A DNA stretch of 64,000 nt from positions 62,001 to 126,000 of the IMG/VR virus record IMGVR_UViG_3300042147_000020; one strand, written 5' to 3'. Each line of letters begins with the position of its first letter. The first letter of the stretch is position 1. Below, piece by piece: positions 16,191 to 37,640 of this stretch. The notes beneath the pieces are model-generated. The model was not told where the DNA came from, ran no database searches, and saw only the letters and a list, made by a program, of their open reading frames with translations. Both the position numbers and the translations under genes were made by a program.

Positions 16191-18194
16191 TCAGTTACGA
16201 CCCCAGTTGCCGGTGAACGGCGAGCTGAAGAGGCGGGAGTTCTGCTGGGTAGCGGTGCCGTAGTTGAAGAAGTTGCCCACGTTCTGATTAACAACCAGGT
16301 GGTCCAGAGCGTAACCGCCGCGCTGTACTTGACCTGCGTTGTCATCCAGACCTTTGGCCGGACGGACGTTCAGACCCGACTTCACGATCGCTTCCGACAG
16401 TGCGTCCAAGAACGTGTTGTCGAACGATACGCGACGAGCGAAGCCCTTGATCACGATGTCGCCAGAGATCAGTTGACGCAGGATTGCCTTGCGCTGATCC
16501 AGACGGACTTCCAGTGCGATGTTGGTGTTGCGGTGGGTGTCTTCCCACGCTTCAACCAGCTTCGGATTGGTTTTGCCAGCCAGGTTCAGGATTGCGACGT
16601 AGTCCAGCTCACGCAGGTCACGACGATTGCCTTCGCGATCGTAGTAGTAGCCCAGGTGGATGCGATCCTGATCGTCGTAGCAGACCGGAGCCGCTGCGTT
16701 GAACAGATTCTGGAAGTGACCCATGGTCAGGTTGTTCGCCGCTTGCAGGATTGCCATGCGGGCATCTTCGTTGCCGTTGGCGGCAGCGATGAAGGTTTGG
16801 TGAATCCAGCTCAGCTCACCAGCTTCTTCGATGTCCAGGGTGTAGATCAGCTTTGGAGCGATCAGCATGTTGATCAGTTGGCGCATTTCGTTGTCGCCGA
16901 ATTCGGCGCTACGAGTGTCCAGACGATCAGGCTTGGCTTGCGGATCACCGGTCAGGTTGATTTCGTAGCCCAGTGCGCCCAGGTCTTTCAGGTCAACGTC
17001 GTTGCCTTTACCTTTGTGGGTGCGGAAGGTACCGGACCAGTGCATGTTGCGGTTCAGACCCAGTGCAGTGCTGAGTGCCAACAGTTGCAGTTCCATGGTG
17101 ACGGCGTCAGTCATGGTGTCGATGGTGGTCATGACCAGACGAGGCTGGTACATTTGAGTAGCCATCGGCTGCTGCTGTTGGAACATGTTGCCCATCTGCG
17201 GCGCTTGCTGGAAACCGGCAGCGGCAGGTTGGTACATCAGATCAACGTACGCAGTAACGCGAGTGAGCTGACGGGACTGTTGCAGGCCGAACTGTGCATC
17301 GGTTTGGGTCTGTGCCGACATGCCGACAATGATGTCGCCACGAACTGGCAGGCCGACGATGTTCTCTTCATGTTGACGAGTGAAGTCAACACGAGCGATC
17401 ATTTGGTCGTTAGCACCAACTTCACCCAGGGTGAACGGTTCTTCAACCGAGCCCAGCTTGTTGTCCATGATGGTGTACACCGCCTGAGTGGCGTTGTGCA
17501 ACAGACGGTTGAAGCGGGTTTCGGTGAAGTCTTCGGTTTCGCTGTTGACGATCACGCAGCCGCCGTCGTGAACCAAGGCATTGATGCCGTAGCTGTCGAT
17601 GACGAACTTTTCCAGAACCGACCAGTACGACTTGTGCAGGTAGATGTCACCGGCAACAACGTCGACTTCGACCTGAGCACCGTTCAGGTTCAGGGTCGAG
17701 CTTTCCAGCGGAGAACCCGAGGATTCAATCATCAGGCTGTAGACCGCGATGTGGTTCTGACCGCCGACGGCTTCCTTGTAGCAGACCAGGATCGAGCTGT
17801 AGGTAACTGGGGTAGCGTTGTTGTCCAGAACCAGGAGACGGAAGTCAGCCTTCTGCTGTTCGTTCATGGTTTTGGCGATGCGGTCTTTCAGGCCTTGAAA
17901 GATGACGCTGACGTCTTCACCGGCCATGTTACGGCCAACTGGACGACGGTGGTTGGCGTTGATGTCGAGGACCGAACGGCCACGGCTACCGACGCGAGAA
18001 GAAGGCTGGTTCACGTTTGCACCTGCTTGAGCGAAAGACTGTTGTTGGGATTGTTGAGCTTGTGGTTGAACTTGTGGCTGCTCAGCCTGCGGAGCCGACT
18101 GAGATGCCTGGGGATTCAAACCTGCCGTACGCATGGCATCAGCCATTGCATTGTTCGGAGGAGTTTGTTCGTTACGGTTCTTCTGGACGGCCAT
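16191..18194 (-). CDS. chmA: Chimallin, major nuclear shell protein
   Basis: 667 aa, immediately upstream of beta'-N. Q-rich disordered N-terminus, aromatic C-terminal tail, strongly biased codons, early promoter. Confidence 0.85.
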   Translation of the reverse strand: MAVQKNRNEQTPPNNAMADAMRTAGLNPQASQSAPQAEQPQVQPQAQQSQQQSFAQAGANVNQPSSRVGSRGRSVLDINANHRRPVGRNMAGEDVSVIFQGLKDRIAKTMNEQQKADFRLLVLDNNATPVTYSSILVCYKEAVGGQNHIAVYSLMIESSGSPLESSTLNLNGAQVEVDVVAGDIYLHKSYWSVLEKFVIDSYGINALVHDGGCVIVNSETEDFTETRFNRLLHNATQAVYTIMDNKLGSVEEPFTLGEVGANDQMIARVDFTRQHEENIVGLPVRGDIIVGMSAQTQTDAQFGLQQSRQLTRVTAYVDLMYQPAAAGFQQAPQMGNMFQQQQPMATQMYQPRLVMTTIDTMTDAVTMELQLLALSTALGLNRNMHWSGTFRTHKGKGNDVDLKDLGALGYEINLTGDPQAKPDRLDTRSAEFGDNEMRQLINMLIAPKLIYTLDIEEAGELSWIHQTFIAAANGNEDARMAILQAANNLTMGHFQNLFNAAAPVCYDDQDRIHLGYYYDREGNRRDLRELDYVAILNLAGKTNPKLVEAWEDTHRNTNIALEVRLDQRKAILRQLISGDIVIKGFARRVSFDNTFLDALSEAIVKSGLNVRPAKGLDDNAGQVQRGGYALDHLVVNQNVGNFFNYGTATQQNSRLFSSPFTGNWGRN

Positions 18195-27673: not shown

Positions 27674-28126
27674 TTAACGACCGCACCAACTCTTCTTGGT
27701 GCCACCGTCGTACGCAACTGCAAGACCATTCTTGATCAGCAGTTGTGCGATGTCTATGTCATCCACCATCACTGTGGAGACGATGCGGAAGTACTTATCA
27801 CGTTCAGGGTTCACCAGTGTAATCTGGTTGGCTGCGTCGATGTACTTCTTCAGCAACAGTCGGGCTTGACGTGCTTTGGCTTTCTCAGCTTCTTGCTCAG
27901 CGACTACTTTACAAGTGCTACGCATTTCAGGAGTATCAATCCCAGCCAAGCGAATCCCGATGTTCTTTCCGAAGAGGTCAGGAACCTCAGGGATGTTCAC
28001 ATAGAGAGTATCGCCATCGTAAATCCTAACCACTTGGGACGACTTCAGGTTGAAGTCCCCGAAGGCAAAGACGCTGAATGAAGCCAGCATCAGTACCAAT
28101 GTTGCCACAATGTTTCTAACCTTCAT
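27674..28126 (-). CDS. Thermonuclease (SNase-like) with N-terminal signal peptide
   Basis: VVRIYDGDTL, IRLAGIDTPE and DKYFRI motifs. MKVRNIVATLVLMLASFSVFA is a Sec-type signal. Confidence 0.88.
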   Translation of the reverse strand: MKVRNIVATLVLMLASFSVFAFGDFNLKSSQVVRIYDGDTLYVNIPEVPDLFGKNIGIRLAGIDTPEMRSTCKVVAEQEAEKAKARQARLLLKKYIDAANQITLVNPERDKYFRIVSTVMVDDIDIAQLLIKNGLAVAYDGGTKKSWCGR

Positions 28127-28184
28127 ACTAAACTCCAAGGGATATAGGACATACTATCCTTGGGTCGTCTGTAGGCTTCTTAAA

Positions 28185-28381: not shown

Positions 28382-28510
28382 TGGGCATCCCCGACAAGCC
28401 TCGAACTTGCGACCTCCAGCGCTCCTCTCGTTAAACCATCTTCACTACTGGAGAGTTAATGATGGAACTTGAGGTTGGACTGGTGCTCTAACCGACTGAG
28501 CTACGGGGAC
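28382..28510 (-). ncRNA. tRNA-like RNA with a 58-nt insert in place of the anticodon loop
   Basis: Acceptor GTCCCCG/CGGGGAT, D arm GCTC/GAGC, T arm GCAAG-TTCGAGG-CTTGT. Stem CCAGT/GCTGG encloses 58 nt. Ends G-CCCA. Confidence 0.8.
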
Positions 28511-28519
28511 GACTACAAA

Positions 28520-29060: not shown

Positions 29061-29735
29061 TCACTCGTGGGTTGTGGACAACTCACTGATGATGCACACT
29101 GACCCGTCTTCCACAGGAGTAGTATCGCTGTAGTCGACTTGATTGTAGACGCCCCCGTGGAACTGAAGAACACGATCGTTCCAAGAGCTGTCCAACCGTA
29201 GGGCTGGACAGATGGACTTACGACCTTGACACAGAACCGAAACGGATACGGAACCACCGGCGGTCACGTGAACACTGATCTTGAAAGGTACCCCAAGTGG
29301 GACATTCTCCAAGATGGTGGCGTTCATGATTACCGGATCGTCAAAACTAGCACGGAACCCGATCGTGAGCTTACCTTTGTTCCAGAACACCTTAAGCGGC
29401 GGGGTGTTCGAGTCTTTGACATGAAGCTGTGCTACCACAACCTTCTGGGCCCAGTTGACCTTGGTCAACGTCATTGTCTGGCGGCTCCAGTGATGGGCGG
29501 CACTTGACAAGGACCAGTAGTCAGCCTCTTTCCATTCCGTACGAGTACGGTGTACGCTTTTACTCGAAGCCCCCTTTGTGGGAGCAGTGAACTGAATGGA
29601 ACCGTCTTCGAGACGGAGCACGCAGCTTGCACAGTTGGCTAAAGCGTAGTCACCCATGACTTCTAGAGCCACTGGGTCAGTCGGAGAAACAGGTAGCGGT
29701 GTAGCGATGATGTACTGCGATATGTCGACAAACAT
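29061..29735 (-). CDS. Polysaccharide lyase family 7 (alginate lyase-like)
   Basis: ~224 aa. RTEWKE, AQLH and FHGGVYNQ correspond to the PL7 motifs R(S/T)ELR, QIH and YFKAGxYxQ. Confidence 0.8.
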   Translation of the reverse strand: MFVDISQYIIATPLPVSPTDPVALEVMGDYALANCASCVLRLEDGSIQFTAPTKGASSKSVHRTRTEWKEADYWSLSSAAHHWSRQTMTLTKVNWAQKVVVAQLHVKDSNTPPLKVFWNKGKLTIGFRASFDDPVIMNATILENVPLGVPFKISVHVTAGGSVSVSVLCQGRKSICPALRLDSSWNDRVLQFHGGVYNQVDYSDTTPVEDGSVCIISELSTTHE

Positions 29736-29780
29736 TCTGTCATCTCCAGTTAGGACCATAAGATGACGGAACGGGGAATG

Positions 29781-29869
29781 TGGCAGTAGATGAGAGATTC
29801 GAACTCTCGAGGCTGTTACACCTACACCCTTAGCAGGGGCGCTCCTTAATCCATCTCAGACAATCTACT
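29781..29869 (-). tRNA. trnS: tRNA-Ser(GCT)
   Basis: AGTAGAT/ATCTACT acceptor, CT-GCT-AA loop, long variable arm, GCCA end. Confidence 0.92.
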
Positions 29870-30031: not shown

Positions 30032-30107
30032 TGGCTCCATGACCTGGACTCGAACCAGGGACATCTTAATTAACAGTCAAGCGCTCTACCAACTGAGCTA
30101 CCATGGA
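30032..30107 (-). tRNA. trnN: tRNA-Asn(GTT)
   Basis: Canonical cloverleaf, CT-GTT-AA loop, GCCA end. Confidence 0.95.
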
Positions 30108-30777: not shown

Positions 30778-31602
30778 TTAACGACGGTTGTAGTTGATGC
30801 GCTTAACTTCAAGTTCAGCGAACAAGTCCATCGGGTAATCGTCTGGCAGGTGAGCAGCAACTGTAGAGTTGGTGGTCTGCGGGTCGATCACAATGCTGAA
30901 CGGCAGCCGAACGAGGTTGCCCAGTGCACCGTTGATGATGATGTCGCGGTTGATCTTGGTCGCATTGCTGAATCGGGCCGCAACCTCTACACCGTCTTTG
31001 GTAACGATGCGCAGTAACTTGATCGAGTCGATGCTGTCAGTGGAGTCAATCGCTACACCACTGGCTCCGATCAGGCCGAACAGAGACTTGCGATCGCCGT
31101 CCTTCAACGGGAGACGGATCACCGAAGTGTCGCTCACGATGGTAGGTTCGTGTAGGATCTGCCAGTCTTCAGCCAGTTGATCCGATTGTGCCGGAGTCCA
31201 CGGGGTGAATACGTTCTGTGCAGTCTTCATGCCGACCCATGGTGCGAGTGTTGGACACTCGTTCTCACCGGGCTTGTAACCGACAGTTCCACAACCCACG
31301 TCGTAATGACCAGGCTGAACCATTACCAACCACATACCTTGACCATTCCACGAAGGACGCGTAACACGCTTGCCTTGCTTCAGGGCTTCGATGGCTAACC
31401 CGAAGGTCAGAGAATCGCACGGACGGTAGCTGTCCTCGAACACGGCTTTAGGCGACCAAGACTGGTGACCGTTGTCGTATTCCACAAGGTAGCCTTCATC
31501 GGCACCGTTTTCGTCAGCAGGTAACTCCCAGCCTTTGAGTTGGTTGTAGTCCAACCGAGACATCGGAGTTCCGATAACCTTCTTGGTACCAATGTAGTTC
31601 AT
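30778..31602 (-). CDS. tad2: DUF2829 / Tad2-family protein with N- and C-terminal extensions
   Basis: LTFGLAIEALKQGKRVTRPSWNGQGMWL...MKTAQNVFTPWTPAQSDQLAEDW is the DUF2829 signature. Confidence 0.8.
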   Translation of the reverse strand: MNYIGTKKVIGTPMSRLDYNQLKGWELPADENGADEGYLVEYDNGHQSWSPKAVFEDSYRPCDSLTFGLAIEALKQGKRVTRPSWNGQGMWLVMVQPGHYDVGCGTVGYKPGENECPTLAPWVGMKTAQNVFTPWTPAQSDQLAEDWQILHEPTIVSDTSVIRLPLKDGDRKSLFGLIGASGVAIDSTDSIDSIKLLRIVTKDGVEVAARFSNATKINRDIIINGALGNLVRLPFSIVIDPQTTNSTVAAHLPDDYPMDLFAELEVKRINYNRR

Positions 31603-31624: not shown

Positions 31625-31703
31625 GGGTCCCCCTACCGGATTCGAACCGATGCTCGCTACCCACGAAGGGCGGCAGCTCTAACCGACTGAGCTTAAGGGC
31701 GAC
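31625..31703 (-). pseudogene. Degenerate tRNA
   Basis: D arm and T arm (ATCGG-TTCGAAT-CCGGT) intact. G:G mismatch in the acceptor, irregular anticodon arm, no CCA. Confidence 0.6.
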
Positions 31704-32149: not shown

Positions 32150-32225
32150 TGGCTCCGGGCCTTGGGTTCGAACCAAGGACCAACGCATTAACAGTACGCT
32201 GCTCTACCAACTGAGCTAACCCGAA
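32150..32225 (-). tRNA. trnN: tRNA-Asn(GTT), second divergent copy
   Basis: Canonical cloverleaf, CT-GTT-AA loop, GCCA end. Confidence 0.93.
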
Positions 32226-33444: not shown

Positions 33445-33566
33445 CTGCCGGTGTCGTGCATCGAAGCACTGCTAGTTCCCGGACCGCACTAGCTTTCCAT
33501 TAACGAAGGCTGACGCGTTGTCAGCTATGGCCCTCGGTAATGACTCCCCTGGAGTACACCTGCACA
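33445..33566 (-). ncRNA. Multibranch structured RNA (~120 nt) with a T-loop-like arm
   Basis: Closing helix GCAGGTGT/ACACCGGC. Arms ACTCC/GGAGT, GCTGAC/GTCAGC, GCTAGT/ACTAGC and GTGC-TTCGAT-GCAC. Confidence 0.5.
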
Positions 33567-33572
33567 ATAGAT

Positions 33573-33730
33573 TGCCCCTTGGTTGGATTCGAACCAACGA
33601 CCCTATCCGTTCAACCGACTCCGTTTAACGGGAGAGTTTAGTTACACCCGCTCAGTCAACTCCACCTTACGGTTCATGTTGCGAATACGAATGCTCTCGG
33701 ACTGTTCTACCAGACTGAACTACAAGAGGC
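33573..33730 (-). ncRNA. tRNA-like RNA with an 88-nt insert in place of the anticodon loop
   Basis: Acceptor CCTCTTG/CAAGGGG with a possible G-1:C73 pair, D arm GTTC/GAAC, T arm GTTGG-TTCGAAT-CCAAC. GTCCG/CGGAT encloses 33610-33697. Confidence 0.8.
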
Positions 33731-33747
33731 ACAAACCTTTAAAACTA

Positions 33748-33848
33748 GGCCCCTAGGATCAGATTCGAACTGATGACCTTCACAGAGACACTACCTCAAT
33801 TCAGTAGGCGTGTCTCTACAGCGCTCTAACCATCTGAGCTACCCAGGG
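33748..33848 (-). ncRNA. tRNA-like RNA with a 42-nt extended anticodon arm
   Basis: Acceptor CCCTGGG/CCTAGGG, D arm GCTC/GAGC, T arm ATCAG-TTCGAAT-CTGAT. Arm AGAGACAC/GTGTCTCT plus CTAC/GTAG. Confidence 0.8.
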
Positions 33849-33856
33849 AGAAACCT

Positions 33857-34009
33857 TTAAAACTCACCACGTTCTGGGCGAGCCTTAGTGGCTGCGATAC
33901 CAACAAAGAACACGACTGCGAATACACCCAGTCCTGCTGTTGGGTTAAACGCTGCCGGAATCGCTGCCGTGATTAGCGCTGGTACAAAAACAAACACTGC
34001 ACGCATCAT
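33857..34009 (-). CDS. 50-aa membrane protein (below the ORF-track cutoff)
   Basis: MMRAVFVFVPALITAAIPAAFNPTAGLGVFAVVFFVGIAATKARPERGEF, GGGAG RBS. Confidence 0.65.
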   Translation of the reverse strand: MMRAVFVFVPALITAAIPAAFNPTAGLGVFAVVFFVGIAATKARPERGEF

Positions 34010-34323: not shown

Positions 34324-34353
34324 CAAAAAAAAAAGGGTTCTCGAAAGAACCCC
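34324..34353 (-). terminator. Intrinsic terminator
   Basis: GGGTTCT-TTCG-AGAACCC followed by T10. Confidence 0.85.
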
Positions 34354-34366
34354 TGAAGGGAGGATG

Positions 34367-34777
34367 TTACGGAATCGCAGGAAAGCCTACAATCTTGAGG
34401 ATCAGGTTACGCTTACGGCGGTACCAACCAGCGGACTTGGCAGGGAAGCCTCTCTCAGTGCTCTGCTTGCGGATCTGAGGGTCGTCTTCGAACAACAGGG
34501 GCACTGGGAAGTATCTCCAGTGTTTCGGTTCGCCAGAGCGCACCAGAGCGTGCAGGGTACGTTTGCTCCACTTACTGGTAGTGATACCAGTGATCAGTTC
34601 TTGACGGATCTCTTCGTGGTCAGCTTCGGTTGGGTACACGGCGAAGATGTTCTTGTAGTGGGCAACAGTCGTCTTGTCTTCATTGGTTGTCTTGTCCATT
34701 ATAAAGAGGACGCCACCAATGTCGTGGAGAGAGATGTTACCATTCTCGTATTTGTGTGTTACGTAATCTGCGGACAT
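34367..34777 (-). CDS. Early hypothetical protein
   Basis: 136 aa with RBS and an upstream early promoter. Confidence 0.75.
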   Translation of the reverse strand: MSADYVTHKYENGNISLHDIGGVLFIMDKTTNEDKTTVAHYKNIFAVYPTEADHEEIRQELITGITTSKWSKRTLHALVRSGEPKHWRYFPVPLLFEDDPQIRKQSTERGFPAKSAGWYRRKRNLILKIVGFPAIP

Positions 34778-34830
34778 GATTCGGGCCTTCTAAGGTATGG
34801 GGGGATTAAAGGTACTATCCTATTCACTTG

Positions 34831-34848
34831 GGTAATATAGATCTGAAA
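34831..34848 (-). promoter_or_regulatory. Early promoter
   Basis: Minus strand TTTCAGATCTATATTACC. Confidence 0.7.
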
Positions 34849-36486: not shown

Positions 36487-36678
36487 TCAGCCCAGCCCGA
36501 CACCAGAAGGACGGTTCTCGACCTGATGTTTCGCAGGATCGTAAACTACCTTCTCGTAACAGTTGTGCCAAGGTTTACCCAAACAGCAAGTGCAATGGAA
36601 CGGGGCTGCCACTGGATTGCTCAGGAGTTCAATGACTCCGCACTTGTCGCAAGCGTATTCCAGCAGCGTACCGCTCAT
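36487..36678 (-). CDS. Small Zn-ribbon protein
   Basis: CxxC (CDKC) and CxCC. Start overlaps the phuZ stop. Confidence 0.7.
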   Translation of the reverse strand: MSGTLLEYACDKCGVIELLSNPVAAPFHCTCCLGKPWHNCYEKVVYDPAKHQVENRPSGVGLG

Positions 36679-37640
36679 TACAACACCAGGCCGTCGTCAG
36701 TAGTGGCAGTGTCGCCCACCAGATCGACAGCAGCAGCACGGCCTTCACGACGACGAATGAAGTCGTCCAGAGTCTTCTGGAGTTTCTCGTAAGTAGCATC
36801 GAGATTCTCGGTGGACACTACGAGGTGAACTTCTTTGACGCCTTCGATAGCAGTCGTGAAGTAACCGGTGCACGGATATTCCGGGATCGGCTCTTCGAGA
36901 TGCTTCTGATCACGGTCGCTGTACAACGAAGCGATGGTGATCGGGTCCTTGATGACCTTGACGTCTTCCGGGTTGTAGAAGATGTCCAACATCGCCAGTT
37001 GTGCAGGCACGCTGGTCGAGTGGTTGAAACGCAACCAGTTGGCAACGTCTTTGGTATCCAGCTCGTCGTTCTGACGCGAAGTCAGGTAGCACAGGCTGGA
37101 GATGGCCAGGTTGATTTGACCGTCGACTACCGAACGAGTGCAGTCGCCGCCGTTGTGGCGGTAGTACATGACGATCGGGGTATCGACTTGCTTGGAGATG
37201 GCTGCCAGCGACTTGATGGTGTTCAAGGTGTTCTGTGCAGTGATGGTCGATTCCGAAGAACCAGCCAACAGCACAACTACCGAGTGACCGCGAGCTGCCA
37301 GTTCTTTTGCCAGCAACGGACCGATGACCGAACCCGAACCGCCGGACGCCGAGAAGACCACGATGTTGAAATCTTCGGGGGCTTGCTTCAGCAGGATTTG
37401 CTTGACCGCTGCGGAGATCTGCGCGTGGTTCTCTTTACGCACTTTACCGGAGCCATCAGTTTTGTCGAGGACGTAGATCGAGTCTTCGTTGGTGATACCG
37501 GCCAAGTTGGAACGGCTGGTGTCAATGAAGCTGACCAGAGGGGTCGCGAAGCCAGGAGCTGGCGGACGGTCGATGTAGGCCTTGACGATGTTCGTACCCA
37601 GACCACCACAGCCGTACAGACGCACTTTACCTTGTTCCAT
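36678..37640 (-). CDS. phuZ: PhuZ phage tubulin
   Basis: 320 aa. GCGGLG, tubulin signature SASGGSGS and C-terminal DDGLVL tail. Confidence 0.93.
   Translation of the reverse strand: MEQGKVRLYGCGGLGTNIVKAYIDRPPAPGFATPLVSFIDTSRSNLAGITNEDSIYVLDKTDGSGKVRKENHAQISAAVKQILLKQAPEDFNIVVFSASGGSGSVIGPLLAKELAARGHSVVVLLAGSSESTITAQNTLNTIKSLAAISKQVDTPIVMYYRHNGGDCTRSVVDGQINLAISSLCYLTSRQNDELDTKDVANWLRFNHSTSVPAQLAMLDIFYNPEDVKVIKDPITIASLYSDRDQKHLEEPIPEYPCTGYFTTAIEGVKEVHLVVSTENLDATYEKLQKTLDDFIRRREGRAAAVDLVGDTATTDDGLVL

What the first reader, a model, noticed from the sequence alone, without database searches (positions are those of the whole stretch)
33573..33730. Second tRNA scaffold with an 88-nt branched insert and a His-like G-1:C73 end
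Seen: canonical D and T arms. GTCCG/CGGAT closes 88 nt (33610-33697) with internal helices AACCG/CGGTT, GACT/AGTC and CGGG/CCCG. The acceptor is flanked by G-1 and C73, and no CCA is encoded. Established: G-1:C73 is the bacterial tRNA-His identity element. Inference: an independent insertion into a different tRNA body suggests the architecture is selected rather than accidental.
Basis: partly seen in the sequence, partly recalled or inferred. Interest (0 to 1): 0.82.

Follow-up and report, generated by a model that had tools for sequence, protein, structure and literature searches.

The report
Phage tRNA-like RNA with structured insert
A giant "nucleus-forming" phage from soil and plant metagenomes encodes a tRNA-shaped RNA whose anticodon loop is replaced by a conserved, branched 88-nt RNA domain; it is one of at least four such tRNA-carried structured RNAs in this phage and is most likely a stable non-coding RNA, not a histidine tRNA.

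Summary
The feature is real, on the minus strand at 33731..33573. It has an 8-bp acceptor helix, canonical D and T arms, and a 5-bp anticodon stem (GUCCG/CGGAU) closing 88 nt. No CCA is encoded.

The window is a phiKZ-like phage with chimallin, PhuZ and a divergent DNA polymerase. The RNA sits at the head of its tRNA island.

Eleven further contigs carry the same insert. Its helices covary strongly (97% of cells paired, 10 compensatory pairs, 0/500 shuffles).

The insert is a three-way junction: a long Pa-Pb-Pc arm with a GNRA or UUCG tip, and a short Pd arm.

The carrier varies between lineages. It is a full cloverleaf in the window's lineage. In two others it is only an acceptor stem plus a hairpin, usually ending in CCA.

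G-1:C73 becomes C:G in siblings. No 7-nt loop with U33 can be recovered. So this is neither a tRNA-His nor a spliceable decoder.

Three more tRNA-like RNAs with expanded anticodon arms lie in the window. Cultured Erwinia jumbo phages carry an unannotated analogue.

Best reading: a tRNA chassis that provides processing and stability, carrying a structured effector RNA with an unknown partner. T4 RNA C/D are the nearest precedent.

The parts
33573..33731 (-). Whole tRNA-like RNA 'S2' (about 159 nt): tRNA chassis plus 88-nt insert
   Evidence: Sequence; ARAGORN with introns; covariance model R1 finds orthologues in L002, L003, L004 at 177-195 bits
33723..33730 (-). Acceptor 5' strand, 8 nt including the 'G-1'
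   Evidence: Pairs with 33574-33581. Pairs covary among lineage-A homologues, and the top pair is G:C or C:G
33574..33581 (-). Acceptor 3' strand including 'C73'; followed by A then AUC, so no CCA
   Evidence: CCA is encoded in 8 of 12 homologues, not in the window, L002, L029 or L045
33704..33720 (-). D arm (GUUC / GAAC, loop with A14 and G18G19)
33582..33598 (-). T arm (GUUGG-UUCGAAU-CCAAC)
   Evidence: The second stem pair is U-A, A-U or G-C in homologues
33698..33702 (-). Anticodon-stem 5' strand GUCCG
   Evidence: Pairs with 33605-33609. Compensatory changes: UA to AU in L005, CG to UA in L010 and L011
33605..33609 (-). Anticodon-stem 3' strand CGGAU
33610..33697 (-). 88-nt insert ('Y domain'): a three-way junction replacing the anticodon loop
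   Evidence: Alignment A6 and the count of structure pairs: 97.1% of cells paired, 10 pairs with changes on both sides, 0/500 shuffles, slid controls 26-40%
33645..33693 (-). Long arm Pa-Pb-Pc. Pa is 33693-33688/33650-33645; Pb is 33681-33678/33660-33657; a 4x3 internal loop (AUGA/GGA) follows; Pc is hairpin 33673-33664 with GUAA loop
   Evidence: One Pa pair shows 4 pair types. All 4 Pb pairs change on both sides. The Pc tip is GNRA, UUCG or a longer stem in homologues
33613..33638 (-). Short arm Pd'/Pd. Pd' is AAC/GUU at 33638-33636/33615-33613; Pd is CUCC/GGAG at 33634-33631/33622-33619 with one bulged C
   Evidence: the bulge register pairs 7/7 at 4 positions; UA to CG is compensatory
33639..33644 (-). 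Conserved junction strand UAACUA (UAAC(C)UA in relatives); with AGAG (33697-33694) and GAA (33612-33610) it forms the junction core
   Evidence: Alignment A6. No partner helix found; the role is inferred
33733..33744 (-). Leader repeat UUUUAAAGGUUU immediately 5' of S2; second copy at 33851-33862 before S1
   Evidence: Two exact copies, 0.2 expected by chance. Conserved before S2 in L002, L003, L004, L029
33749..33852 (-). Neighbour S1: tRNA body with an 11-bp extension of the anticodon stem
   Evidence: Absent from L002, L003, L004
33446..33563 (-). Neighbour S4: tRNA-like RNA with 8-bp acceptor, small D hairpin, long 'anticodon' arm, long variable arm and 4-bp T stem
   Evidence: RNAalifold on 6 loci: 40 pairs, 13 with compensatory change; 88-94% identical even in L005, L010 and L003
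28385..28514 (-). S3 ('family X'): full tRNA body ending GCCA with an unbranched expanded 'anticodon' arm of about 70 nt, at the far end of the tRNA island
   Evidence: RNAalifold on 7 loci: 40 pairs, 25 with compensatory change

Best explanation
S2 is a stable, structured non-coding RNA built as 'chassis plus cargo'. The chassis is a tRNA-like body: acceptor helix, T arm, and in this lineage also a D arm. The cargo is a 88-nt three-way-junction domain grafted where the anticodon loop should be. Shown: the fold of both parts, its conservation through compensatory changes, the interchangeability of the chassis, and the lack of any recoverable anticodon loop. Inferred from established tRNA biology: the RNA is transcribed with the phage tRNA cluster. 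The acceptor/T minihelix is what RNase P, 3' trimming enzymes and the CCA-adding enzyme recognise. That gives the RNA defined ends and tRNA-like stability; in the window's copy the CCA must be added after transcription. The D/T elbow gives an L shape from which the cargo projects. The cargo is the functional part and most likely works by binding a protein, or less likely a small ligand, of host or phage. My preferred but weakly supported guess is a decoy or sponge at the phage-host interface. The reasons are that it occupies the position that anticodon-directed host factors inspect, and that it lies in a tRNA island which also carries a Tad2-like anti-defence gene. It does not decode and is not a tRNA-His.
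For: The window is a chimallivirus. The tRNA body is present. Eleven other contigs carry the insert. Covariation: 97.1% of cells paired, 10 compensatory pairs, 0/500 shuffles, slid controls 26-40%. The chassis varies: full cloverleaf in the window, L002, L029, L003, L004; no D arm and a non-T-loop hairpin in L005, L034, L058, L010, L049, L045, L011, yet the acceptor helix and mostly NCCA are kept. In a DNA relative (run X5) the insert has 2 changes, one turning U.G into U-A, against 7 in the 26-nt 5' body half. No reading frame is open across homologues. Three more RNAs of the same build are in the window. An unannotated analogue with compensatory changes occurs in Erwinia Agricanvirus phages. 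There is no Rfam family for the insert. A Tad2-like gene is in the island.
Against: No expression data: no RNA run could be listed for this stretch, so transcription, processing and stability are inferred. Overall nucleotide identity of the insert to its homologues (63-95%) is about the same as that of the neighbouring PhuZ gene (69-92%). The constraint therefore shows as structure-preserving change, not as unusual sequence conservation. The binding partner is unknown. The adjacent 136-aa basic protein gave only a low-confidence model, and the RNA-protein complex job was not folded. The anti-defence role rests only on position and neighbourhood.
Confidence: 0.72

Rival explanations
1. It is an intron-containing tRNA gene. 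The 88 nt are removed, by self-splicing or by a phage- or host-encoded endonuclease plus ligase, leaving a working decoder tRNA (His, Gln or other).
For: The insert sits exactly in the anticodon-loop position of a good cloverleaf. ARAGORN can force a Gln(UUG) reading. Structural conservation is also expected of a self-splicing intron.
Against: Every way of leaving 7 nt between the stem strands gives G, not U, at position 33 (reading). The nucleotides that would form the 'anticodon' take part in helix Pd'. In three lineage members (L005, L010, L011) and their relatives the exons lack a D arm and a T loop and could not give a tRNA, yet the insert is kept. 88 nt is far below known group I introns, and no intron or ribozyme family matches even at E<=10. 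No bulge-helix-bulge is present at the junctions. No RNA ligase or splicing endonuclease was found among about 45 window ORFs scanned, though only 64 of 239 kb was seen.
Confidence: 0.07
2. It is a new small self-cleaving or otherwise catalytic or mobile RNA that has colonised tRNA-like genes. Its conservation then reflects its own propagation or processing, not a service to the phage.
For: The same insert is found in different carriers, and a different insert in the same carrier. It has a three-way junction with conserved junction strands, as in several small ribozymes.
Against: No match to hammerhead, twister, pistol, hatchet, HDV or other ribozyme models. The junction strands do not fit the hammerhead core (by inspection). 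There is only one copy per genome, always at the same syntenic place about 2.7-3 kb from PhuZ, which is not the pattern of a mobile element. Carrier exchange is explained as well by recombination between the near-identical D and T arms of neighbouring paralogues.
Confidence: 0.08
3. It is part of a Y-RNA-like (YrlA) system. The T arm of S1, the spacer and the D arm of S2 would form the permuted tRNA-like module that partners Ro60/Rsr.
For: Weak Rfam YrlA hit at 33675-33800(-), 23.6 bits, E=0.024. Cultured Erwinia chimalliviruses do carry a much better YrlA-like module (44.5 bits, E=1.7e-7).
Against: The score is far under the gathering score of 69. Two tandem tRNA-like genes give the T-arm-then-D-arm order by themselves. 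S1 is absent in L002, L003, L004 and L029, which keep S2. Both S1 and S2 have their own complete acceptor helices. No TROVE protein was found in the ORFs scanned.
Confidence: 0.04
4. It is a decaying tRNA pseudogene with an accidental insertion.
For: No CCA is encoded, there is no anticodon, and standard tRNA finders miss it.
Against: The insert is retained in 12 contigs spanning 61-100% PhuZ protein identity with 10 compensatory pairs. The body also keeps pairing through compensatory changes.
Confidence: 0.02

Closest known systems
Phage T4 RNA C and RNA D (species 1 and 2 stable RNAs, rnaC/rnaD)
   Same: Encoded at the edge of a phage tRNA cluster. RNA C has an acceptor-like terminal helix and a canonical GGUUCGAAUCC T arm with long hairpins in place of the other arms. 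It is a stable RNA whose function is still unknown (PMC9697503).
   Different: No sequence or model similarity (R2 finds nothing in the T4 locus). In T4 RNA C the expansions replace both the D and anticodon arms. Here a complete cloverleaf carries a branched domain in the anticodon loop only. The host phage family is different.
Bacterial Y-RNA-like YrlA (Rfam RF02553)
   Same: A modular ncRNA in which a tRNA-like domain (T arm, D arm, acceptor-like helix) is joined to a second functional module through the 'anticodon stem'. A YrlA-like module exists in related Erwinia jumbo phages.
   Different: YrlA is circularly permuted (ends in the anticodon-side stem, acceptor closed by a loop) and carries a Ro60-binding helix. 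S2 has its ends at the acceptor helix, scores 23.6 against a gathering score of 69 only by borrowing S1, and has no Ro motif conserved in its homologues.
tmRNA
   Same: An acceptor/T-arm tRNA-like domain carrying a large structured insertion; phage-encoded examples exist (own knowledge).
   Different: ARAGORN calls no tmRNA. There is no tag reading frame and no G3:U70. S2 is 160 nt against about 360, and it keeps a normal D arm and anticodon stem.
Intron-containing tRNA genes (bacterial group I introns in the anticodon loop; archaeal bulge-helix-bulge introns)
   Same: Extra RNA located in the anticodon loop of a cloverleaf.
   Different: Too short for group I and no Rfam hit. No bulge-helix-bulge. 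No U33 or anticodon is recoverable. It is kept in carriers that cannot be tRNAs.
Engineered 'tRNA scaffold' for recombinant RNA, and gammaherpesvirus tRNA-miRNA chimeras (own knowledge, not tested here)
   Same: A tRNA body used as a processing and stability handle for an unrelated structured RNA placed in or next to it.
   Different: Those are an artificial design and a eukaryotic Pol III/tRNase Z system. This would be a natural bacteriophage counterpart.

Membership tests
Decoder tRNA-His | Cloverleaf with acceptor, D, anticodon and T arms | tested here: met
Decoder tRNA-His | 7-nt anticodon loop with U33 and anticodon GUG | tested here: not met
   The stem closes 88 nt. No choice of 7 residual nt has U33 or GUG at 34-36
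Decoder tRNA-His | G-1:C73 kept as an identity element in orthologues | tested here: not met
   G:C in the window, L002, L029; C:G in L003, L004. Different ends in L005, L010, L011
Decoder tRNA-His | Charged by HisRS | not testable with these tools
   Needs an aminoacylation assay
tRNA gene with group I intron | Intron of about 200 nt or more with the P1-P9 core, matching Rfam Intron_gpI | tested here: not met
   88 nt; no hit even at E<=10
tRNA gene with archaeal-type intron | Bulge-helix-bulge at the exon-intron junctions and a functional tRNA after removal | tested here: not met
   The junction strands AGAG and GAA flank a plain 5-bp stem. Carriers without a D arm keep the insert
YrlA / Y RNA-like | Rfam RF02553 at or above the gathering score; permuted T arm, closed acceptor, D arm | tested here: not met
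   23.6 bits against 69, and only across the S1-S2 boundary. S1 is missing in four homologous loci
YrlA / Y RNA-like | Ro60/Rsr (TROVE) partner encoded nearby | tested here: inconclusive
   None among about 45 ORFs of the 64-kb window. The rest of the 239-kb genome and the host were not seen
tmRNA | tRNA-Ala-like domain plus tag ORF; detected by ARAGORN | tested here: not met
Phage tRNA-cluster stable RNAs (T4 RNA C/D type) | Encoded within or beside a phage tRNA cluster, with tRNA-like terminal helix and T arm but no anticodon | tested here: met
Phage tRNA-cluster stable RNAs (T4 RNA C/D type) | Sequence or structure homology to T4 rnaC/rnaD | tested here: not met
   Model R2 finds nothing in L017. 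This is an analogue, not a homologue
Phage tRNA-cluster stable RNAs (T4 RNA C/D type) | Accumulates as a stable processed RNA in infection | not testable with these tools
   No RNA run was listed

The most novel reading that the evidence does not exclude
Nucleus-forming jumbo phages run a natural 'tRNA-scaffold' system. Several unrelated structured cargo RNAs (Y domain of S2, X arm of S3, S4, the Erwinia-phage analogue) are grafted in place of the anticodon loop of tRNA-like chassis and swapped between chassis by recombination. They use tRNA processing, and possibly tRNA-type export from the phage nucleus, to reach the cytoplasm as stable effector RNAs. There they would sequester a host defence or translation factor or an immune signal. 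This would be an RNA counterpart of the protein sponges, such as Tad2, encoded in the same island.
Probability: 0.25. Interest if true: 0.85.

Novelty: new variant of a known kind. Interest (0 to 1): 0.66.

Why it matters
Phage tRNA clusters are usually read as codon-usage or anti-defence tRNA supplies. T4's tRNA-cluster RNAs C and D have stayed unexplained for fifty years. Here a whole set of covarying, tRNA-carried structured RNAs is visible in one clade of chimalliviruses, and an unannotated analogue is present in cultured Erwinia amylovora phages. That makes the question 'what are tRNA-like stable RNAs of phages for?' experimentally approachable. It also shows that standard annotation (ARAGORN defaults, Rfam) misses this class entirely. 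Finally, it offers natural examples of RNA domains that fold when grafted into a tRNA anticodon stem, which is of practical interest for RNA engineering.

Tried and rejected
1. BLAST searches of the S1/S2 region and of S4 against 50,697 GenBank phages found no match. The clade is known only from metagenomes.
2. An exact-motif scan of IMG/VR found only the four closest contigs. A degenerate two-gap pattern recovered all seven IMG/VR contigs carrying the insert, plus five chance hits that the covariance model rejected.
3. The same pattern, with narrower gaps, in GTDB genomes gave 21 hits, none accepted by model R2. There is no cellular counterpart at this sensitivity.
4. CRISPR-repeat mimic idea (hairpin followed by UCGGUUGAAC, reminiscent of type I-C repeat ends). 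No CRISPR-DR family hits the insert at E<=10, and the motif varies (UCAGUCGAA, UCAGUCUAA) in relatives. Dropped as unsupported.
5. Hidden anticodon arm in the Pd loop (GU-NAA-AC in lineage A). The loop is 5-6 nt and unrelated in L005, L010, L011. Rejected.
6. K-turn or sarcin-ricin reading of the 4x3 internal loop. The key A is G in L003, L005 and L011, so there is no fit. Left open.
7. Pseudoknot AGAG/CUCU: pairs in only 3-5 of 7 at two of its four positions. Not adopted.
8. Protein-coding overlap (the 57-aa plus-strand ORF 33583-33756): the frame is not open in homologues.
9. Expression evidence: no RNA run could be listed for the S1/S2 stretch. RNA runs listed for the 3-kb stretch hold only 6-9% of its words. 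The single read-laying run was used on DNA relatives.
10. Partner search. The conserved upstream 136-aa protein has no Pfam or PHROG family and only low atlas scores. Its model has pLDDT 58, so no fold search was run. The RNA-protein complex job was not folded and is not evidence either way.
11. Literature searches found no description of tRNA bodies with structured anticodon-loop inserts in phages.

Full report
WHAT THE WINDOW IS

The 64-kb window encodes chimallin (16191-18194, minus strand) and a PhuZ tubulin (36678-37640, minus strand). It also encodes a divergent family-B DNA polymerase, split multisubunit RNA polymerase pieces, a phiKZ gp29-like protein and internal head proteins. It is therefore a nucleus-forming phiKZ-like jumbo phage (Chimalliviridae).

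It corresponds to a 238.8-kb IMG/VR contig (L001). It has no close relative among 50,697 GenBank phages: chimallin is at most 31% identical. Near-identical or related DNA occurs in rhizosphere, soil and plant metagenomes.

On the minus strand between 28.4 and 33.9 kb lies a tRNA island with eight ordinary tRNAs. Small genes are interspersed, among them a Tad2-like anti-Thoeris domain protein, an alginate lyase and an SNase-like nuclease.

THE OBSERVATION

Read on the minus strand, 33731..33573 is a tRNA body.
- The acceptor is an 8-bp helix: G:C on top of CCUCUUG/CAAGGGG.
- U8-A9 follow, then a D arm with A14 and G18G19.
- The variable loop is 6 nt, and the T arm is GUUGG-UUCGAAU-CCAAC.
- The anticodon stem GUCCG/CGGAU closes 88 nt (33697-33610) instead of a 7-nt loop.
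- The trailer is AAUC, so no CCA is encoded.

Default ARAGORN and the Rfam tRNA model do not report it. ARAGORN with introns allowed does.

RELATIVES

Anchoring on PhuZ in IMG/VR gave L002-L005, L010 and L011. A covariance model built on the first four copies (R1) finds the RNA at the same syntenic place, 2.7-3 kb downstream of PhuZ, in all of them.

A degenerate pattern scan of JGI metagenomes, followed by a second model of the insert alone (R2), added L029, L034, L045, L049 and L058. The same pattern in GTDB genomes gave only chance hits rejected by R2. More distant PhuZ relatives (L012-L016) have neither the RNA nor a tRNA cluster next to PhuZ. The RNA is thus confined, as far as seen, to one clade of chimalliviruses.

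STRUCTURE OF THE INSERT

On the seven-sequence alignment A6 I tested a structure derived from the substitutions. It consists of:
- the anticodon stem;
- Pa (6 bp);
- Pb (4 bp);
- a 4x3 internal loop;
- hairpin Pc, tipped by GUAA, GCAA or UUCG, or lengthened by a base pair;
- a second arm made of Pd' (AAC/GUU) and Pd (CUCC/GGAG with one bulged C).

Results:
- 97.1% of 175 cells form standard pairs.
- 10 of 25 pairs show changes on both sides, and 0 of 500 shuffles reach this.
- Sliding the 3' partners by 1-3 columns drops pairing to 26-40%.
- One Pa pair occurs as U.G, C-G, U-A and G-C; its neighbour occurs as C-G, G-C and A-U.
- All four Pb pairs change on both sides.

In L003, L005, L010 and L011 they are broken at several positions without compensation.

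The insert is thus a three-way junction. Its junction strands are conserved: AGRN, UAAC(C)UARAC and GAA/UAA.

No frame is open across homologues, so the conservation is not that of a gene. No Rfam family matches the insert even at E<=10.

Overall nucleotide identity of the insert to its homologues is similar to that of the PhuZ gene. Selection shows as preserved pairing, not as frozen sequence. The 3' third (Pd arm and junction) is nearly invariant within the window's own lineage.

In a DNA relative (run X5) the 98-nt stem-plus-insert has two changes, one converting U.G to U-A. The 26-nt 5' half of the body has seven, and the 3' body is replaced altogether.

THE CARRIER VARIES

In the window, L002, L029, L003 and L004 the carrier is a full cloverleaf whose acceptor and T stems covary. 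L003 and L004 encode CCA.

In L005, L034 and L058, and in L010, L049, L045 and L011, the D arm is absent. The T arm is a short hairpin with a non-T loop. The acceptor helix is kept and the end is mostly (N)CCA.

The 3' half of the L003/L004 carrier is almost identical to the carrier that holds a different insert (family X) just upstream in L005. Inserts and carriers have therefore been exchanged, probably by recombination through the near-identical D and T arm sequences of neighbouring paralogues.

What is constant is the cargo, the stem that holds it, and an acceptor-type terminal helix.

WHY IT IS NOT A DECODER OR A tRNA-His

No choice of seven residual nucleotides yields U33; position 33 would be G. 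The would-be anticodon nucleotides belong to helix Pd'. The reduced carriers could not be tRNAs. The G-1:C73 pair is not conserved. 88 nt is far below group I introns, there is no bulge-helix-bulge, and no ribozyme model matches. About 45 ORFs of the window include no RNA ligase, splicing endonuclease or TROVE protein. This covers only a quarter of the genome.

THE ARCHITECTURE RECURS

- S1 (33852..33749, minus strand) is a tRNA body with an 11-bp extension of the anticodon stem. It is missing in L002-L004 and L029.
- S3 (28514..28385, minus strand), at the other end of the island, is a full tRNA body ending in GCCA with an unbranched arm of about 70 nt. Its insert is homologous to the one carried upstream of S2 in L005, L010 and L011. 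RNAalifold gives 40 pairs, 25 of them with compensatory changes.
- S4 (about 33563..33446, minus strand), between S2 and tRNA-Tyr, has an 8-bp acceptor, a small D hairpin, a long 'anticodon' arm, a long variable arm and a 4-bp T stem. It shows 13 compensatory pairs and is the most conserved of all, at 88-94% in L003, L005 and L010.

Outside the clade, a BLAST hit of the S3 body led to Erwinia amylovora Agricanvirus phages. There, an unannotated RNA (L083:3928-4040) has acceptor, D and T arms and about 45 nt in the anticodon loop. It is 99-100% identical in 16 GenBank records. Against phage AH06 (83% identity) it shows compensatory changes. The same region holds a YrlA-like permuted tRNA module at 44.5 bits, E=1.7e-7.

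HOW IT MOST LIKELY WORKS

Shown: the fold, the covariation, modularity of chassis and cargo, and the absence of decoding features.

Inferred from established tRNA biology: co-transcription with the tRNA cluster; 5' maturation by RNase P at the acceptor/T minihelix; 3' trimming and CCA addition; and a resulting stable L-shaped RNA from which the Y domain projects. The cargo is the functional part and probably binds a protein.

A role as a decoy or sponge against a host factor is my preferred guess. The insert occupies the anticodon position, the island carries a Tad2-like gene, and phage tRNA clusters are known (own knowledge) to counter tRNA-directed defences. It remains a guess.

The weak YrlA hit in the window is best explained by two tandem tRNA-like genes.

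COMPARISON WITH WHAT IS KNOWN

The closest precedent is T4 RNA C/D. These lie beside the T4 tRNA cluster. RNA C has an acceptor-like helix and a canonical T arm, and the function is still unknown (PMC9697503). There is no homology.

YrlA, tmRNA and engineered tRNA scaffolds share the logic of a tRNA-like handle joined to another module, but each fails a defining feature here (see the membership table).

I found no paper describing this class.

VERDICT

This is a real, selected, structured RNA. It is a new RNA family and a new variant of the little-understood kind 'tRNA-like stable RNAs of phage tRNA clusters'. Its function is unresolved and no expression data are available.

Noticed in passing
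window 33446-33563 (-): S4: a fourth tRNA-like RNA between S2 and tRNA-Tyr. It has an 8-bp acceptor, a 5-bp D-like hairpin, a 9-bp-plus branched 'anticodon' arm, a long variable arm and a 4-bp T stem (an 8/4 acceptor branch). It shows 13 compensatory pairs and is 88-94% identical even in L003, L005 and L010, more conserved than S2.
   Followed up: partly
window 28385-28514 (-): S3 ('family X'): a full tRNA body ending GCCA with an unbranched irregular 'anticodon' arm of about 70 nt. It is homologous to the insert carried just upstream of S2 in L005, L010 and L011. 25 of 40 pairs show compensatory change.
   Followed up: partly
window 33749-33852 (-): S1: a tRNA body whose anticodon stem is extended by about 11 bp and ends in a small loop containing UGAA. 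It is preceded by the same 12-nt leader UUUUAAAGGUUU as S2, and is absent from L002, L003, L004 and L029.
   Followed up: partly
L083:3928-4040 (+) = NC_041972.1 169688-169800; also L084:1495-1615: Cultured Erwinia amylovora jumbo phages (Deimos-Minion, RAY, Ea35-70, AH06 and others; 17 records) carry an unannotated tRNA-like RNA with about 45 nt in place of the anticodon loop. Compensatory changes appear against AH06. ARAGORN misses it even with introns allowed.
   Followed up: partly
L083:2966-3029 (+); L084:1-80 (+): The same Erwinia phages carry a YrlA-like permuted tRNA module (T arm, closed acceptor hairpin, D arm). It scores 44.5 bits, E=1.7e-7, below Rfam's gathering score of 69. No Ro60/TROVE gene was looked for there.
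   Followed up: no
window 30778-31602 (-): A 274-aa protein with a Tad2-like (Thoeris anti-defence 2) domain lies inside the tRNA island. It is conserved in L002-L005 and duplicated in L010 and L011.
   Followed up: no
window 29061-29759 (-) and 27674-28138 (-): An alginate lyase (PF08787, E=7e-40) and a staphylococcal-nuclease-like protein lie within or next to the tRNA island. The nuclease gene follows S3 and is conserved in L002, L003 and L005.
   Followed up: no
window 34367-34777 (-), 34333-34354 (-): The real gene upstream of the RNA cluster is the 136-aa minus-strand frame, 98% identical in L002 against 80% for the overlapping plus-strand ORF 34364-34840. It has an invariant basic C-terminus GWYRRKRNL.LKI.GFP.IP and no Pfam or PHROG family. 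It is followed by a strong terminator-like hairpin with a run of T. The AlphaFold model was poor (pLDDT 58).
   Followed up: partly
window 30032-30107 and 32150-32225 (-); 29781-29869 and 31625-31702 (-): There are two tRNA-Asn(GTT) genes in the island. ARAGORN calls eight tRNAs, of which Rfam's tRNA model at gathering score reports only six; Ser(GCT) and Arg(TCG) are missed.
   Followed up: no
L005:16491-16569 (+): ARAGORN reports a 'tRNA-???' with a two-base anticodon in the relative's tRNA cluster. It may be another non-canonical tRNA-like gene.
   Followed up: no
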